64,000 bases of DNA from Scyliorhinus canicula. Taxonomy: Eukaryota. Below, piece by piece: positions 40,772-55,777 of this stretch. A model generated the notes under the pieces. The model searched no databases and was not told where the DNA came from. It saw only the letters and a program-made list of their open reading frames with translations. The translations under genes and the position numbers were made by a program. Numbering within the stretch: position 1 is the first letter of the stretch; the number at the start of each line of letters is the position of its first letter. Location: contig NC_052154.1 of NCBI RefSeq assembly GCF_902713615.1, forward strand, positions 91,891,030-91,955,029. Direction: 5' to 3'.

Positions 40772-40809
40772 CGTTTCTTCACAAGCAGGAGATCCATCTT
40801 CAGCTGTCA
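40772..40809 (-). CDS. Cytoplasmic-tail exon of a type I membrane protein (probably gene B)
   Basis: Acceptor cttgtattttcaatgcatag|, donor ACG|gtaagt; 38 nt, phase 1 to 0, (V)TAEDGSPACEET; in frame with the TM exon. Confidence 0.7.
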
Positions 40810-40960
40810 CTATGCATTGAAAATACAAGTTGCAAAACGCAATAGTCAGAATCTATTTTTTACAGAATATGTGAGATACAGAAATAACTCCAAGTTTGAA
40901 CAAACATACCATATTATGTTTTCAACAAGCATAAATAAATCGAATTTAAATCATGATTCA

Positions 40961-41137
40961 GGGGGCTGGTTTAGCACAGTGAGATAAACAGCTGGCTTGT
41001 CATGCAGAACGGTGCCAGCAGCGTGGGTTCAATTCCCATACTGGCCTCTCTGAATTGGCACCGGAACGGGGTGACTAGCGGATTTTCACAGTAACTTAAT
41101 TGAAGCCGACTTGTGACAATCACCGATTATTATTATA
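40961..41137 (+). mobile_element. Second-family SINE in the TM-to-cytoplasmic intron
   Basis: gggggctggtttagc head. Confidence 0.9.
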
Positions 41138-41361
41138 TTCTCATCTTTTTCAATCTTGAATTTTTGTCATGCGAAAGGTGAACATAAAATGTCGGAATGG
41201 AATTCAAATTAAACTCTATATATGCATTCCTCTACGATACACAGACCATTCAACCATTTAACTGAAAAGTGAAACGGTCAATTCTGCACTCAAGCTTTGA
41301 CTGACACACGATTCTTTTCTGTTTGAACATGTTTAATATAAATTGTTAATTCTGTCCTTAC

Positions 41362-41472
41362 CCATGCAATTAAATAAATTGCAGTGCCTTCCGATGATGA
41401 CCCCAAGCACGAGACAGACGAAACCACTGATGACGCACCCAACCGTGAACAAGTGAAATTTTGGGCCGATGT
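41362..41472 (-). CDS. Transmembrane exon (probably gene B)
   Basis: Acceptor cattcattaattttgcag|, donor ATGG|gtaagg; 111 nt, phase 1-1; (D)IGPKFHLFTVGCVISGFVCLVLGVIIGRHCNLFNCM, about 21 hydrophobic residues followed by Arg. Confidence 0.85.
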
Positions 41473-42854
41473 CTGCAAAATTAATGAATGTTGCTGAGAA
41501 AGTTCTGTGTATATGACCCACTATTAAGCCAATAAATCCAAAAGGACTGAACAATTATGGACATAATTACCCTAGATCAAAAGATCTGTGGAACACTATT
41601 TTGATTTAGGCACATGGAATTTCAAATGAGAGCAATAGTACAACATTGTATATTTTTAAAAGTTAACCTCGTTTTTCTGTCTTTATTAATACGTGTATTG
41701 TGTTCCTTCAGTTTTTCACCGTCATGCTGATCAGAACGGACTACTGCAAAGAAGTGTACCAACAACTCAACAACCAGGAACACTACAGACAGTTGCCCGC
41801 AGATCCGACCAAGGAACACACCCGCCAACTCAACAGACTGATCAAAACCTTTGATCCAGAGCTTCAGAGCACCCGACGTGCTCTCATCCCACATACTCCC
41901 CACGTTGGAGGACAATACACGAGGCCAACACACCAGGCCGTCCGAATGTATCAGGCAATGGGACCCTGTGACCCTTTAAACATCTCTGGCTACATCGAGG
42001 GCATCTTGAAACCCATCATACAATGAACACTCAACTTCCCTTGAGACACAACGGACTTCCTACAGAAACTCAGCACCCATGGACCAGTTGAACCAGGAAC
42101 ATTCTTCGTCACAATGCACATCTCGGCGCACTACACCAGCATCCCCCATGATGACGGCATCACTGAAACAGCCTCAGTACTCAGCACTGACAACTGCCAA
42201 TCTCCAGACGGAATTCTGCAACTCGTCCGCTTCATTCTGGATCACAACGTCTTCACCTTCGACAACAGTTTCTTCATCCAGATGCACTGAACAGTGATGG
42301 GAACCAAATTGCCACCTCAATATGCTGACATCTTCATGCAAAAGTTTGATCAAGACCTGCTCACCATGCAGAAACGTCAACCAACGTTATACACCAGATA
42401 TATTGATGACATTTATTTCCTCTGGACCCACGGCGAAGAATCACTGAAATGAGTACACAATGACATCAATAAGTTGCATCCCACCATCAGACTCACTATG
42501 GACTACTCTCTAAAATCAGTTGCATTCTTGGACACACTCATCTGCATCAAGGATGGTCACCTCAGCACTTTGTTTTACCACAAGCTCACGGATAACCTCA
42601 CAATACTCCACTTCTCCAGATTCCACCCTAAACACAGGACATGCGGCAATGCAAAATCACCGGGCAGAAATGTCCAGCCAAGTTCCGCACACATGAGTGC
42701 AGCCACAACCGGTACCTTTGATTCAAGTCACATTACATTCATCTCCCTCCATCTGGCCTGGGCTTGCAAATCCTATCAACTGTCCTGGCTTGAGGCAATT
42801 CTCACCTCTTTAACCACTATCTCTCGATCTTTAGAGAGTTAATTATCTGCAAAT

Positions 42855-43175
42855 GTTACAGTGCAGAAGGAGACCATTTGGCCCATTGAGTCCGCACCGG
42901 TTCTTGGAAAGAGCACCCTACCCAAGGTCTACACCTCCATCCTATCCCCGTAACCCCACCCAACACTAAGGGCAATTTTGGACACTAAGGGCAATGAAGC
43001 ATGGCCAAACCACCTAACCTGCACACCTTTGGACTGTGGGAGGAAACAGGAGAACCCAAAGGAAACCCACGCACACATGCGGAGAATGTGCAGAGTCAAC
43101 AAAGACAGTGACTCAAGTCGGGAATCGAAACTGGGACCCTGGACCTGTGAAGCAGTTATGCTGACCACAAATGCC
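42855..43175 (-). mobile_element. HE1-type SINE
   Basis: Reverse copy. Confidence 0.85.
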
Positions 43176-43286
43176 CTAAACATTCAAAGCATTGTCTTGC
43201 ATTTTTGACTTTGTCTATGAATATGTTTCTGGAACATACCTCTTCATCCACCTGAGGAATGAGCAGTTCGCTGAATACTAGTGATT

Positions 43287-43636
43287 TTACATAGAATTTA
43301 CAGTGCAGAAGGAGGCCATTTGGCCCATCGAGTCTGCACCAGCTCTTGGAAAGGGCACCCTACCCAAGGTCAACACCTCTACCCTATCCCCATAACCCAG
43401 TAATCCCACCTAACACTAAGGGCAATTTTGGACACTAAGGGCAATTTATCATGGCCAATGCACCTAACCTGCACATCTTTAGACAGTGGGAGGAAACCAG
43501 AGCACCCAGAGGAAACCCACGCACACACGGGGAGGATGTGCAGACTCCGCACAGACAGTGACCCAAACCGGAAACGAACCTGGGACCCTGGAGCTGTGAA
43601 GCAATTATGCTAACCACAATGCTACTGTGCTGCCCA
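43287..43636 (-). mobile_element. HE1-type SINE inserted in the Penelope pLTR
   Basis: Full-length reverse copy; the pLTR resumes at gaaacaaacctgttgg. Confidence 0.9.
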
Positions 43637-53356: not shown

Positions 53357-53419
53357 CTACGCAAATCCAGCAATAACATTGAAAATGATAATTAAAAGGA
53401 TAAATACTCGTCTTCTTAC

Positions 53420-53731
53420 CTGGGTCAGAACCAGTTACCAGGTGAACAGATATTTTCGGAGCCTGCAGCGTCGTATGGGACACCAGACAAGTGTAAGGTG
53501 TTCCTCTCAGGACTGGCTGTGACTCATGCAGAACACTTGTAGCTTGATAGAGACCTGCTTTATTCAAACGTTTTGTTGTTTGAATCCCGGTTATAATCCT
53601 GCTTGAACCTTTGTACCACTGCAAAGTAACATCTTCCGGGTAAAAGTCCACTGTTTCACATACGAGATGAAGATAGACGTTTGCATTTTCATCAGGCGTT
53701 TTCCAGAGTATGGTTGGAGTATGTGGAACAG
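53420..53731 (-). CDS. Gene B: intact C1-set Ig constant domain exon
   Basis: 312 nt, phase 1-1, acceptor ccattcaag|, donor CCAG|gtaaga; (A)VPHTPTI...LHLVCETVDFYPEDVTLQWYK...GLYQATSVL...YTCLVSHTTL. Confidence 0.93.
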
Positions 53732-54579
53732 CTTGAATGGAGTTCAGGGATAGTTATTAAGCAATGAATATATAGAAAATTAACACATCTCACAGCCAAT
53801 AATTCCACAAAACGCAAGAGTGTTGTTTAATTATTTTTCAAAAATGTTAACAATGGTCTACCTCTACGTATTCAATGATCTCTGAAGCAACCATGTATGT
53901 AAGGCTTTTAAAATCTCACAACCATCAGAACCAATATAATTTCTCGCAAACCGTGTATCAAATTCAAATGCCGTTTTGATTGCGATTTGGCAAATATGGC
54001 ATCCAAGAACAAATCCAATCCCTAAGCAATACGATAAGTGAAGGTTTCTTCCGTTTATAATTCTATGGACTCGTGGAGGGGTGTTGACCAAAATAGTCGG
54101 ACAGCTGTACTTTCATTACAATGGTGTTGAATATTTAACTCCATCCAGAAAAAACAAGGTTGAATTTATTTCACTACGATCTCACCTGAAAATATCTAGA
54201 GACCAGTATCACCCACGATAATTCCAGGCCAGTTAAATTCCGTAAATCATGGAATATTTCTTGAATCAGGCAACTGGAATGATCGTCTTGAAATTGTATG
54301 GATAAGTCTTCGGAAACAATAGAAAAACGGGCAACAAACGGCCGTTCACGTAATTTCACTTGGATGTTCTCAGGTATTTGCACGAATGGCCTGATGAAGA
54401 ATACTCCATAAATTCTCCCCATAATTATTTCGAAAAAAGCTGCCTCGAGTTCAATCCAAATAATACCATGTCGTACAAGCATTATAGCTTGTATTTTAAT
54501 AGTATTTTATGAGGAATTAAATAGTGCTTTACGGTAAACTAGAGGGACATCTCTGAGCAATGTCGCTCCTCCGAACTCC

Positions 54580-54900
54580 ACAGCATCCCTGCAGCGCAGA
54601 AGGATGTCATTTGGCCCATCGAGTCTTCGAATGAGCTACATATTTGCACAGTCCCATCCACCACGCCCAATCCCTTTAACCCCATAACCTAACTTGCAGA
54701 TCCCTGGACAGTAAGGGACAATTTAGCATGGCCAATCGACCTAGCCTGTATATCTTTGGACTGTGGGATGAAACCGGAGACCCACGCAGTCACTGGGAGA
54801 ACGTACAAACTCCACACAGATCGTGATTCCCGGCCAACATTAAATTAGTTTTCCTGGCGCTGTGAGGCAGCAGTGCTAACCACTCTGCCACCGTGCCGCC
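54580..54900 (-). mobile_element. HE1-type SINE in the V-C1 intron
   Basis: Reverse copy. Confidence 0.85.
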
Positions 54901-55272
54901 AACACAGTTAGTAATTTCCAAAACAACCAATTCTATTTTAAGGTTAAGCCATGAAATGCGTTTCACTTTTCTTCGGTATAACCTCAACATTTAAAAAAAG
55001 GTATGTTTTGATAGGCTTCACACATGGTATAAACCGAAACATCCCAATATCAGTTTTGGATTAGTTGAAATATTCTATTGGGTCCCTGCATGCAATTTCC
55101 AAATTGTCAGCTTTTGGGATTGCCGAAATGTACCAAATATTATAATTTTCTGAATTACGTTAAAGTAACCAAATATAGGACTAATAAAATCCACTTGACG
55201 CAATTCTGGTCGACCTTATATATATATATTTGAGAGAATAATCCAAACATTCCACCCAACAGTGATATTTAC

Positions 55273-55590
55273 CGTGAACAACAAATGTTGATCCAGTTCC
55301 GTTATTCATCCTCGCTCTTGCTTCTTTGATACCGCAGTAATAAATACCGGCATCATGCAAACGTACATCAAGGAGTTGGAAGGTGCTTTGCCCTTTCCTC
55401 TTTAAAACATGCTTCCTCATGTCTGAAGTCGGTTGCATAAATACATTTTCGCCGAGTCTCCACCAGAAAATATTCACTTCTGAATTATCAGACAGAGGAG
55501 TGAATGCACAAGTGATGGTAATATTTTGTCCAACCATCACAATCTTGTGTTGAGGTCTTTGCAAAACTTGAGTATCGGCATAACAATTAA
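55273..55590 (-). CDS. Gene B: intact unsplit VJ-type Ig variable domain exon
   Basis: 318 nt, phase 1-1, acceptor ctcttcccctctttcaaag|, donor CACG|gtaaat; VLQRP...GQNITITC...IFWWR...FQLLDVRLHDAGIYYC...NNGTGSTFVVH. Confidence 0.95.
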
Positions 55591-55722
55591 CTTTGAAAGA
55601 GGGGAAGAGAGAAAATATACAATCAATCAATTGAACATTCAAGATCTGAATTACAATATCTTATAGTTTTGTTGGAATAAACACTATCAAGGCTTCAAAA
55701 TAAAAATTAATGCGACCGATAC

Positions 55723-55777
55723 CTGTGCTGATCATCCCCAGGATCAAGGAGGACTGAAGAAGAGCGCGAACAATCAT
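55723..55777 (-). CDS. Gene B: leader (signal peptide) exon
   Basis: ATG at 55777; MIVRALLQSSLILGMIST plus a phase-1 donor ACAG|gtatcg; in frame with the V exon. Confidence 0.88.

What the first reader, a model, noticed from the sequence alone, without database searches (positions are those of the whole stretch)
40772..55777. Gene B: intact leader-VJ-C1 receptor resembling a germline-joined antigen-receptor chain
Leader (18 aa), V (106 codons) and C1 (104 codons) exons are stop-free, all phase 1, with canonical GT-AG sites. The V carries its J-like G strand (NNGTGSTFVVH) in the same exon, with no RSS. The constant domain is true C1-set (CxxxxFYPxD, W, YxCxVxH). C1-set domains are largely restricted to Ig, TCR, MHC, B2M, tapasin, SIRP and related proteins, so a non-rearranging VJ-C1-TM molecule in a cartilaginous fish is a candidate primitive or innate-like immune receptor. 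This is the most interesting element in the window.
Basis: partly seen in the sequence, partly recalled or inferred. Interest (0 to 1): 0.85.

Follow-up and report, generated by a model that had tools for sequence, protein, structure and literature searches.

The report
Catshark germline VJ-C1 membrane receptor gene
This is a real, transcribed small-spotted catshark gene for a membrane receptor built like one antibody or T-cell-receptor chain that needs no DNA rearrangement. It is one conserved member of a large, unnamed shark, ray and chimaera receptor family, so it is interesting but not unique.

Summary
The gene lies on the minus strand. It has a split leader, a single-exon V domain with a built-in J strand, and one C1-set exon. 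All have the stated phases and GT-AG sites, and there is no RSS.

RNA contigs from public runs show every junction: V-C1, C1-TM, TM-cyt1 and cyt1 to a last exon at 21289-21164.

The product is 319 aa: VJ-C1, an uncharged TM segment, and a tail with a degenerate ITIM (LVYADP) and an ITSM-like TEYAAV. Two contigs use other acceptors and would give tail-less forms.

The window is Scyliorhinus canicula. RefSeq already predicts the gene as "immunoglobulin lambda-1 light chain-like", but with a wrong 3' end that skips the TM exon.

Gene B has one ortholog in each of eight other shark species. It sits in a family of at least 93 VJ-C1 proteins, all chondrichthyan, with long-tailed ITIM/ITSM forms and short-tailed forms carrying a charged TM residue.

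By sequence it is equally distant from Ig lambda and SIRP-alpha. Its predicted shape is SIRP-like. It is apparently not on the MHC chromosome.

I read it as a SIRP-like, paired-receptor-type inhibitory or regulatory receptor, not an antigen-receptor relic. This scan has met the same family elsewhere in this genome, including 10.7 Mb away on this chromosome.

The parts
55723..55777 (-). Leader exon (MIVRALLQSSLILGMIST + 1 base). An in-frame upstream ATG at 55798 would add MVITFSN. Donor GT at 55722-55721. The leader intron is 132 nt, giving the split leader typical of Ig/TCR V genes.
   Evidence: Sequence. Identical to the N-terminus of RefSeq model P0159. RNA contigs extend 83 to 569 nt upstream of the coding exons, by record arithmetic.
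55273..55590 (-). V exon with built-in J strand (VJ). 318 nt, phase 1/1. Carries WWRLGE, YYCGIKEARARMNNGTGSTFVVH and sequons NIT and NGT. No RSS.
   Evidence: Pfam V-set E=1.9e-7. RNA contigs cover 55273-55528 with 0-1 mismatch. No heptamer or nonamer.
53420..53731 (-). C1-set constant-domain exon. 312 nt, phase 1/1.
   Evidence: Pfam C1-set E=9.8e-12. RNA contig X1 record 6 joins 53731 to 55273 exactly, and X2 record 14 ends at 53420.
41362..41472 (-). Stalk, transmembrane and juxtamembrane exon (DIGPKFHLFTVGCVISGFVCLVLGVIIGRHCNLFNCM). 111 nt, phase 1/1. The TM segment is uncharged.
   Evidence: Hydropathy scan. The loose ends of the X8 and X9 contigs at this exon's 5' side equal the end of the C1 exon (53423 onward), which shows a direct C1-TM splice. 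Matches orthologs P0151 and P0003.
40772..40809 (-). Cytoplasmic exon 1 (VTAEDGSPACEET). 38 nt, phase 1 to 0.
   Evidence: The joint 41362|40809 (skips 552 nt, GT..AG on the minus strand) is seen in four runs, X7, X8, X9 and X1.
21164..21289 (-). Last coding exon (LQFPEGGDNGNLVYADPHTIGSNKSGMQMHNERCTEYAAVK, stop TAA). It holds the degenerate ITIM-like LVYADP and the ITSM-like TEYAAV.
   Evidence: tblastn with ortholog P0151 gives 83% identity. The loose end of the 1993-nt X8 contig after 40772 equals 21289-21260, with AG acceptor.
36333..36431 (-). Alternative acceptor exon after cyt1, seen in run X7. It reads KRPTQM then stop, so the isoform would lack both tyrosine motifs.
   Evidence: X7 loose end located at 36431-36402 with AG acceptor. 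Translation. One contig only.
26663..26691 (-). Alternative acceptor exon after cyt1, seen in run X9. A stop codon follows immediately, so the isoform would be tail-less.
   Evidence: X9 loose end located at 26691-26663 with AG acceptor. One contig only.

Best explanation
Gene B is a germline-encoded, non-rearranging type I membrane receptor of Scyliorhinus canicula. It has a signal peptide, one VJ-type variable domain, one C1-set domain, a short stalk, an uncharged transmembrane helix and a 64-residue cytoplasmic tail with two tyrosine motifs.

It is the catshark copy of a single-copy orthogroup conserved across sharks. That orthogroup sits inside a large chondrichthyan family with two kinds of member. 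Long-tailed members carry ITIM/ITSM motifs. Short-tailed members carry an Arg or Lys in the TM segment. This is the layout of paired inhibitory and activating receptors.

Most likely mechanism (inferred, not shown):
1. The V domain binds a cell-surface or pathogen ligand through its CDR-like loops. The CDR3-equivalent is the most variable part among paralogs.
2. On engagement the tail tyrosines are phosphorylated. The ITSM-like TEYAAV is present in this gene, and the orthologs also carry the canonical ITIM LxYAAL.
3. The phosphotyrosines recruit SH2 phosphatases or adaptors that damp or tune leukocyte activation, as for SIRP-alpha, PD-1 and other ITIM/ITSM receptors.
4. Alternative 3' exons can yield tail-less, non-signalling forms.

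Shown: gene structure, transcription, splicing, domain types, family and orthologs.
Inferred: ligand binding mode, signalling, cell type.
For: - Exon chain and all junctions seen in RNA contigs. The open reading frame is 319 aa.
- V-set and C1-set by Pfam.
- AlphaFold ectodomain model: pLDDT 88, pTM 0.78. Its best whole-ectodomain superpositions are SIRP-beta1 and SIRP-alpha (TM 0.73-0.74, rmsd 4.0-4.4 A), against Ig light chains and TCR-beta at TM 0.42-0.43.
- Family profile against PDB: SIRP-alpha d1-d2 aligns in one collinear stretch (74.5 bits), on a par with Ig lambda V-C (76.9 bits) and above UrIg2 V-C1 (58 bits).
- In the protein atlas, the nearest named clusters after the family's own are SIRP-alpha clusters.
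- Orthologs carry LxYAAL and TEYAA[IV].
- Family members split into long ITIM/ITSM tails with uncharged TM and short tails with R/K in the TM.
- In the tree, gene B falls in a 100/100-supported clade with one sequence per shark species. The starred inner groups pair the two Scyliorhinus with Mustelus, and unite the three orectolobiforms.
Against: - No functional data of any kind.
- The first tyrosine motif in both Scyliorhinus species (LVYADP, LVYAVP) has Pro at +3, so it is not a canonical ITIM. Signalling may rest on the ITSM alone, or differ.
- Tissue and cell type of expression are unknown, because run labels are coded.
- Contig depths are low (about 3-17).
- The extended V-C1 geometry comes from a predicted monomer model.
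- Tyrosine motifs of this kind recur in many IgSF receptors and do not prove inhibition.
Confidence: 0.7

Rival explanations
1. It is a member of the shark NCR3 (NKp30) family that keeps an ancestral C1 domain. If so it is part of a family already described for nurse shark (Kinlein et al. 2021, which I could not read) and would bind B7H6-like ligands.
For: [quoted passage not shown]
- NCR3 ranks 3rd, 10th and 26th among Swiss-Prot fold matches to the V model, and NKp30 3noi ranks 18th in PDB.
- V-only, TM-anchored relatives with ITIM tails exist (P0089, P0090, P0101).
- From memory, the F-G strand of NKp30 resembles this family. That is a lead only.
Against: - Identity to NKp30 is only 21-23%, no better than PD-1 (26%), PD-L1 (24-26%), TCR or CD79b, and all E-values lie within a factor of ten.
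- NKp30 is absent from the best 60 PDB sequence hits of the V exon.
- The genes that Verissimo et al. label NCR3 lie in MHC class III, next to AIF1 and DDAH2, on chr19 in white shark and chr34 in sawfish. This family sits on other, differently sized chromosomes.
- Papers from that laboratory describe NCR3 as a VJ gene and UrIg as the novel VJ-C1 gene.
- Gene B has no charged TM residue.
Confidence: 0.17
2. It is a true chondrichthyan SIRP-family gene, a homolog of SIRP-alpha and SIRP-beta that has lost the third domain, and it would bind a CD47-like ligand.
For: - Many family members are auto-named SIRP-alpha-like or SIRP-beta-like.
- SIRP clusters are the nearest named atlas clusters.
- SIRPs give the best ectodomain TM-scores.
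- The V-C1 alignment to SIRP-alpha 2wng is collinear.
- The family has paired ITIM and charged-TM forms.
- One skate model (P0095) has V-C1-C1.
Against: - The sequence score to SIRP-alpha (74.5 bits) is no better than to an Ig lambda chain (76.9 bits).
- Gene B has a single C1, and there is no trace of a second C1 exon in the C1-TM intron.
- No bony-vertebrate SIRP appeared among the closest V hits in an exhaustive HMMER search.
- Synteny with the SIRP locus was not examined.
Confidence: 0.1
3. It is a surviving antigen-receptor precursor or relic that works like a TCR or Ig chain: a V-C1 chain that pairs with a partner chain through its V and C1 faces to form an antigen-binding heterodimer.
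For: - It has the split leader, single-exon VJ and C1-set domain that define antigen-receptor chains.
- Ig lambda V-C is the top collinear sequence match.
- A Cys near the mature N-terminus (NCYAD) is shared by several orthologs and could make an interchain bond.
Against: - The predicted V-C1 geometry is extended, not Ig/TCR-like.
- The invariant NG[TS]G motif puts a glycosylation sequon at the position of the FGxG Phe in the V-V interface.
- There is no membrane-proximal Cys in the stalk and no charged TM residue for CD3-like partners.
- The tail carries its own tyrosine motifs.
- No MHC-chromosome linkage was found. Linkage to the IgH/TCR chromosome (chr17) was not tested.
Confidence: 0.05
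4. It is a germline-joined immunoglobulin light-chain gene of the kind sharks are known to carry, as the RefSeq name 'immunoglobulin lambda-1 light chain-like' implies.
For: The RefSeq automatic name. The V-C order and the C1-set domain. Ig lambda is the top PDB match.
Against: - Only 18-25% identity to Ig light chains.
- TM and cytoplasmic exons are spliced on in four RNA runs.
- Orthologs and paralogs form their own family, including in chimaera.
- The J motif is NGTGS rather than FGxGT.
Confidence: 0.01

Closest known systems
SIRP family (SIRP-alpha / SHPS-1, SIRP-beta, SIRP-gamma)
   Same: - Non-rearranging V domain with a GxG J-like strand, followed by a C1-set domain.
- Type I membrane protein.
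- The family has an inhibitory form with tail tyrosine motifs and short-tailed forms with a charged TM residue.
- Best predicted ectodomain superposition (TM 0.73-0.74).
- Collinear V-C1 profile match.
- Nearest named atlas clusters.
   Different: - One C1 domain, not two.
- Two tail tyrosines, not four. In catshark the first motif is degenerate.
- Only about 21% identity, no closer than an Ig lambda chain.
- Seen here only in Chondrichthyes.
- Ligand and synteny unknown.
NKp30 / NCR3, including the MHC-linked shark NCR3 genes
   Same: - Single-exon VJ-type V domain, non-rearranging, with an NGT sequon in the G strand.
- NCR3 is among the top reviewed fold matches for the V domain.
- One V-only isoform in the family is auto-named NCR3-like.
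   Different: - NKp30 has no C1 domain and has a TM Arg that pairs with CD3-zeta or FcR-gamma (established knowledge).
- Gene B has a C1, an uncharged TM and its own tyrosine motifs.
- The genes labelled NCR3 in sharks lie in MHC class III. This gene apparently lies on another chromosome.
UrIg and UrIg2 (elasmobranch non-rearranging VJ-C1 'antibody-like' genes; PMC12227049)
   Same: - Elasmobranch, non-rearranging, split leader, single-exon VJ, C1-type constant domain.
- UrIg2 (9dmx) is the second-best PDB profile hit.
   Different: - UrIg has three C domains and is secreted by liver. UrIg2 has nine or more C domains.
- Gene B has one C1, a TM segment and a signalling-type tail.
- The V-C1 score to UrIg2 (58 bits) is lower than to Ig lambda or SIRP-alpha.
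- UrIg is MHC-linked and UrIg2 lies in the IgH/TCR complex.
Ig light chains and TCR chains (rearranging antigen receptors)
   Same: V(J)-C1 order, split leader, C1-set hallmarks (FYP, YxCxVxH). Ig lambda is the top collinear sequence match (76.9 bits).
   Different: - No RSS and no separate J segment.
- The transcript is identical to the germline, or differs only at one variant site.
- 18-25% identity.
- Predicted extended rather than bent V-C geometry.
- Own TM segment and tyrosine-motif tail.
- NGTG in place of FGxG.
ITIM/ITSM inhibitory V-type receptors (PD-1, BTLA, teleost NITRs)
   Same: - The tail layout in the orthologs, an ITIM-like LxYAAL followed about 20 residues later by TEYAA[IV], mirrors the ITIM-ITSM layout of PD-1 and BTLA (established knowledge).
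- PD-1 is the most identical reviewed V match (26%).
- NITRs also combine a VJ-type V with ITIM and charged-TM forms.
   Different: PD-1 and BTLA have no C1 domain. The second NITR domain is not C1-set, and NITRs are teleost-specific.

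Membership tests
C1-set Ig domain proteins | Match to Pfam C1-set (PF07654) above its gathering score, with the CxxxxFYP...W...YxCxVxH hallmarks | tested here: met
   45.5 bits against a cut-off of 21, E=9.8e-12. The motifs can be read.
VJ-type non-rearranging V domains | V and the J-like G strand with a GxG bulge in one exon, split leader, no RSS | tested here: met
   One 318-nt exon ending NNGTGSTFVVH. Leader intron of 132 nt. 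No heptamer or nonamer. The RNA equals the germline or differs only at one variant site.
SIRP family | Three-domain ectodomain V-C1-C1 | tested here: not met
   RNA shows a direct C1-to-TM splice. The family C1 HMM finds nothing just downstream of the C1 exon, and tblastn with three family C1 domains finds nothing across the C1-TM intron.
SIRP family | Specific sequence relationship to SIRP V and C1 domains, closer than to other V-C1 proteins | tested here: inconclusive
   SIRP-alpha d1-d2 scores 74.5 bits against Ig lambda V-C at 76.9 bits. SIRPs give the best TM-scores and the nearest named atlas clusters.
SIRP family | Binding to CD47, and synteny with the tetrapod SIRP locus | not tested
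   No tool for binding. Flanking non-Ig genes were not reached.
NKp30 / NCR3 | Ectodomain of a single V domain plus stalk, with no C domain | tested here: not met
   The C1 exon is spliced in.
NKp30 / NCR3 | Charged (Arg) TM residue for ITAM adaptors | tested here: not met
   The TM segment FTVGCVISGFVCLVLGVII has no charged residue.
NKp30 / NCR3 | Location in MHC class III, next to AIF1 and DDAH2 | tested here: not met
   Gene B lies on a 198.79-Mb chromosome. The S. canicula MHC chromosome 13 gene list ends at 163.4 Mb. This rests on chromosome sizes, not on a direct coordinate look-up.
NKp30 / NCR3 | V domain specifically closest to NKp30 | tested here: inconclusive
   21-23% identity, ranks 3, 10 and 26 in Swiss-Prot and rank 18 in PDB, with E-values like those of CD79b, PD-1 and TCR. 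Shark NCR3 sequences could not be obtained.
UrIg / UrIg2 | VJ followed by three or more C1-type domains; secreted (UrIg) or many-domain (UrIg2) | tested here: not met
   One C1, then the TM exon. Definition taken from PMC12227049.
Rearranging antigen receptors (Ig/TCR) | Separate V and J segments flanked by RSS, with somatic junctional diversity | tested here: not met
   The VJ is contiguous in the germline with no RSS. RNA contigs from several runs are identical to the genome across the CDR3-equivalent. Their only difference is the single variant at 55397, elsewhere in the V exon.
ITIM/ITSM inhibitory receptors (functional class) | Cytoplasmic [ILVS]xYxx[ILV] (ITIM) and/or TxYxx[VI] (ITSM) | tested here: met
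   TEYAAV fits the ITSM pattern. The first motif, LVYADP, fails the ITIM pattern in catshark, but the orthologs have LxYAAL. Function was not tested.

The most novel reading that the evidence does not exclude
This chondrichthyan VJ-C1-TM family is absent from the UrIg/UrIg2 paper's account of non-rearranging receptor genes retained in sharks, as far as term searches of that paper show. It could be an independent surviving lineage of the pre-RAG VJ-C1 gene pool and the cartilaginous-fish counterpart of the common ancestor of SIRPs and NKp30. In that case a membrane-bound, ITIM-signalling VJ-C1 receptor, rather than a secreted UrIg-like molecule, would be the better model for the gene that the RAG transposon invaded.
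Probability: 0.1. Interest if true: 0.8.

Novelty: new variant of a known kind. Interest (0 to 1): 0.5.

Why it matters
Non-rearranging genes that join a VJ-type V domain to a C1 domain are the material used to argue how antibodies and T-cell receptors arose. The recent literature I could read centres on UrIg, UrIg2, NKp30 and SIRP.

Gene B shows that cartilaginous fish also keep a large, transcribed family of membrane VJ-C1 receptors. The family has inhibitory-type and activating-type forms, and databases hold it only under contradictory automatic names: Ig lambda-like, SIRP-like, tapasin-related-like, B7H6-like and CD276.

A correct gene model is the starting point for cloning, expression mapping and ligand searches. 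Here that model includes the TM exon and a signalling exon 19.5 kb further on, both of which RefSeq misses. A strictly one-per-species shark orthogroup suggests a conserved, probably endogenous ligand.

It is not a one-off. This scan has already met the family at many places in this genome.

Tried and rejected
- Germline-joined Ig light chain: rejected (TM-containing transcripts, its own family, 18-25% identity).
Rejected.
- RSS search around the V exon: nothing.
- MHC linkage: apparently rejected, by comparing chromosome sizes with the MHC gene tables of PMC10751288. I could not name the window's chromosome or test the MHC paralogous regions.
- Papers I could not read because they are not held: Kinlein 2021 (shark NCR3), Flajnik 2012 (B7H6/NKp30), Flajnik 2023 (UrIg), Fu 2019 (PRARP), Ohta & Flajnik 2015. 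Whether this family is already described as 'NCR3 family' or 'PRARP' therefore stays open.
- Full-text searches for VJ-C1, PRARP, SIRP plus shark and NCR3 plus shark found no description of the family.
- The region-restricted protein search had too few candidates to add anything.
- The Callorhinchus locus look-up showed no neighbouring genes.
- No AATAAA or ATTAAA within 660 nt after the stop codon, so the 3' end is not defined.

Full report
**Observation**

The feature lies on the minus strand. Read directly from the sequence:
- The leader exon starts at ATG 55777 and ends at 55723. An in-frame ATG also lies at 55798.
- A 132-nt leader intron follows.
- The V exon is 55590-55273 (318 nt).
- The C1 exon is 53731-53420 (312 nt).

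All three exons are open, in phase 1, and bounded by AG and GT. The V exon ends in YYCGIKEARARMNNGTGSTFVVH, so the J-like G strand with its GxG bulge is encoded together with V.

There is no heptamer, nonamer or RSS-like pair in or next to the V exon. Pfam scores the two exons as V-set (E=1.9e-7) and C1-set (E=9.8e-12, 45.5 bits against a cut-off of 21).

**Transcription and the true gene model**

Public runs of the same species hold the exons.
- One RNA contig joins 55273 to 53731 with no mismatch.
- A second contig stops exactly at the C1 donor, 53420.

A hydropathy scan found a TM-like open segment at 41.4 kb. The sequence there shows an AG...GT exon at 41472-41362, followed by a 38-nt exon at 40809-40772.

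Laying contigs on that stretch gave three results:
- The 41362|40809 joint appears in four runs.
- Loose ends upstream of the TM exon equal the end of the C1 exon.
- Loose ends downstream of 40772 locate in the window at 21289, 36431 and 26691, each behind an AG.

The 21289 exon is the one predicted by the S. torazame ortholog (83% identity). It ends the reading frame at TAA 21166-21164.

The main chain is therefore leader, VJ, C1, TM, cyt1, cyt2. The introns are 132, 1541, 11947, 552 and 19482 nt long, and the protein has 319 residues.

The other two acceptors would stop translation after 6 or 0 further codons and remove both tyrosine motifs. Each rests on one contig.

**Species and annotation**

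The RefSeq protein P0159 is named "immunoglobulin lambda-1 light chain-like" and comes from Scyliorhinus canicula. It is identical to the window over leader, V and C1, then diverges. The model skips the TM exon and ends in an unrelated ORF near 11 kb. Its 44,866-bp span on a 198.79-Mb chromosome matches the window.

So the gene is already predicted, but under a misleading name and with a wrong 3' half.

**Family**

An exhaustive HMMER search with the V exon against 1.84 billion representative proteins gave 290 hits. Every single-V hit whose name I looked up that also has a C1 domain is chondrichthyan. They come from sharks, rays, skates and the chimaera Callorhinchus.

Their automatic names contradict each other: SIRP-alpha-like, SIRP-beta-like, tapasin-related-like, Ig lambda-like, NCR3 ligand 1-like, CD276 homolog and MHC class II beta-like.

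Among the sequences fetched, 93 have both family domains.

Invariant or near-invariant features:
- WW[KR]xGE
- YYCG
- NG[TS]G in the J strand
- CxTxxFYP
- YxCxVSH

Tails fall into two kinds:
- long tails with LxYAAL and TEYAx[VI]-type motifs and an uncharged TM;
- short tails with Arg or Lys in the outer part of the TM.

This is the pattern of paired inhibitory and activating receptors.

The nearest non-chondrichthyan V hits are reptile multi-V "pIgR-like" proteins without a C1.

**Orthology**

In a maximum-likelihood tree of 64 V-C1 ectodomains, gene B sits in a 100/100-supported clade of nine sequences, one per shark species. The starred inner groups are:
- S. torazame with S. canicula, and then Mustelus;
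- Chiloscyllium with Rhincodon and Stegostoma;
- these six together, and then Heterodontus.

Heptranchias and Pristiophorus branch outside them. The fork above Pristiophorus has 95/77 support and is not starred.

Gene B is thus a conserved single-copy gene of sharks, not a recent lineage-specific duplicate.

All orthologs outside Scyliorhinus carry a canonical LxYAAL. Both Scyliorhinus species have Pro at +3 (LVYADP, LVYAVP). TEYAA[IV] is kept in the orthologs other than the three orectolobiforms, which have T[HQ]YAAI.

**Comparison with known families**

Sequence:
- With the ectodomain profile, the best collinear V-C1 matches in PDB are an Ig lambda chain (76.9 bits) and SIRP-alpha d1-d2 (74.5 bits).
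- UrIg2 V-C1 is lower, at 58 bits.
- The V profile alone hits PD-L1, pIgR, CD276 and TCR V domains at similar levels.
- The C1 profile hits Ig constant domains and UrIg2.

Structure:
- The ectodomain model (pLDDT 88, pTM 0.78) superposes best on SIRP-beta1 and SIRP-alpha (TM 0.73-0.74).
- Butyrophilins, CADM and B7 proteins follow at TM 0.61-0.71.
- Ig light chains and TCR-beta give only 0.42-0.43, because the predicted V-C arrangement is extended.
- The V-only model matches CD79b, NCR3, Ig kappa, TCR-alpha, CD8-beta, CD7 and PD-1 at 14-26% identity, with E-values within a factor of ten of each other.

The atlas feature search puts SIRP-alpha clusters next after the family's own clusters.

No known family is clearly the closest by sequence. 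By architecture, tail logic and predicted shape the family works most like SIRPs, but it fails the three-domain test.

**NKp30**

A V-only sawfish isoform is auto-named NCR3-like, while the V-C1 isoform in the same 90% cluster is named SIRP-alpha-like. The names simply follow whichever domain is present.

The genes that Verissimo et al. label NCR3 sit in MHC class III beside AIF1 and DDAH2.

| Species | MHC chromosome: last entry in the paper's gene list | This family's chromosome |
|---|---|---|
| White shark | chr19, about 115.6 Mb | 193.5 Mb |
| Sawfish | chr34, about 19.8 Mb | 53.95 Mb |
| Catshark | chr13, about 163.4 Mb | 198.79 Mb |

The family is therefore apparently not MHC-linked. 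This rests on chromosome sizes, not on coordinates.

The paper on shark NCR3 (Kinlein 2021) is not held. I cannot exclude that it already covers relatives of this family.

**Mechanism**

Shown:
- an expressed type I membrane protein with VJ and C1 domains;
- an uncharged TM;
- two tail tyrosines, one in an ITSM-type context.

Inferred:
- Ligand binding by the V loops. The CDR3-equivalent is the least conserved stretch.
- Tyrosine phosphorylation and recruitment of SH2 phosphatases or adaptors.
- Modulation by tail-less splice forms.

The family-invariant N of NG[TS]G forms a sequon at the position of the interface Phe of FGxG. If it is glycosylated, it would block Ig-like V-V pairing. This is also an inference.

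**Verdict**

It is a real non-rearranging VJ-C1-TM receptor, but not a singular primitive receptor and not an antigen-receptor chain.
- It is one conserved member of a large, unnamed chondrichthyan family of paired-receptor type.

Earlier follow-ups in this scan reached the same view for other copies in this genome, including a pair 10.7 Mb away on this chromosome. I rate it a new variant of a known kind, with moderate interest.

Noticed in passing
window 15182-15574 (+): 'Gene A': a paralogous V exon, 35% identical to gene B's V. Its hydrophobic leader lies in the same ORF and its J strand is cut short (VVVNGTGTKPDSNTSK, then stop). A perfect CACAGTG at 15520-15526 lies inside its CDR3-equivalent, but there is no nonamer at 12 or 23 nt. 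No matching C1 exon in the window. Probably a fragment or pseudogene.
   Followed up: partly
window 53083-53419 (-): The region noted earlier as a 'dead second C1 exon' has only a CPLLQFYPQD-like scrap. The family C1 HMM scores about 0-1 bit in every frame. Not supported.
   Followed up: yes
window 10933-55797 (-), RefSeq model P0159: The RefSeq model of this gene skips the TM exon, extends the cyt1 exon upstream, and ends in an unrelated ORF at 10933-11214. RNA contigs from four runs contradict its 3' half.
   Followed up: yes
window 55397: Variant C>A on the plus strand in two runs of one sample (X2, X6). It changes Arg to Ser in the V exon. It may be an allele.
   Followed up: partly
window 51180-51575, 52360-52760, 54530-54925, 40940-41130: Short interspersed repeats inside the introns carry very high RNA contig depth (thousands to about 200,000), with many chimeric joints. 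This is repeat-family noise, not part of the gene.
   Followed up: no
whole window: CACAGTG occurs 24 times against 10.9 expected, and 0 of 100 shuffles reach 24. This is probably carried by repeated transposon families. None lies in gene B's V exon.
   Followed up: no
window 16100-17400, 27000-28700, 37800-40200, 58257-61000: LINE-type reverse-transcriptase ORFs and a 664-aa ORF that joins a transposase-like stretch to reverse-transcriptase-like sequence. The gene's long introns and flanks are mostly transposon debris.
   Followed up: no
proteins P0170, P0171, P0182, P0186, P0007, P0118 (other loci): Short-tailed family members share a TM motif, [IF]PRF[VI]LxFL...IIVDHF, with a conserved Arg and a C-terminal Asp-His. 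This suggests pairing with an ITAM adaptor.
   Followed up: no
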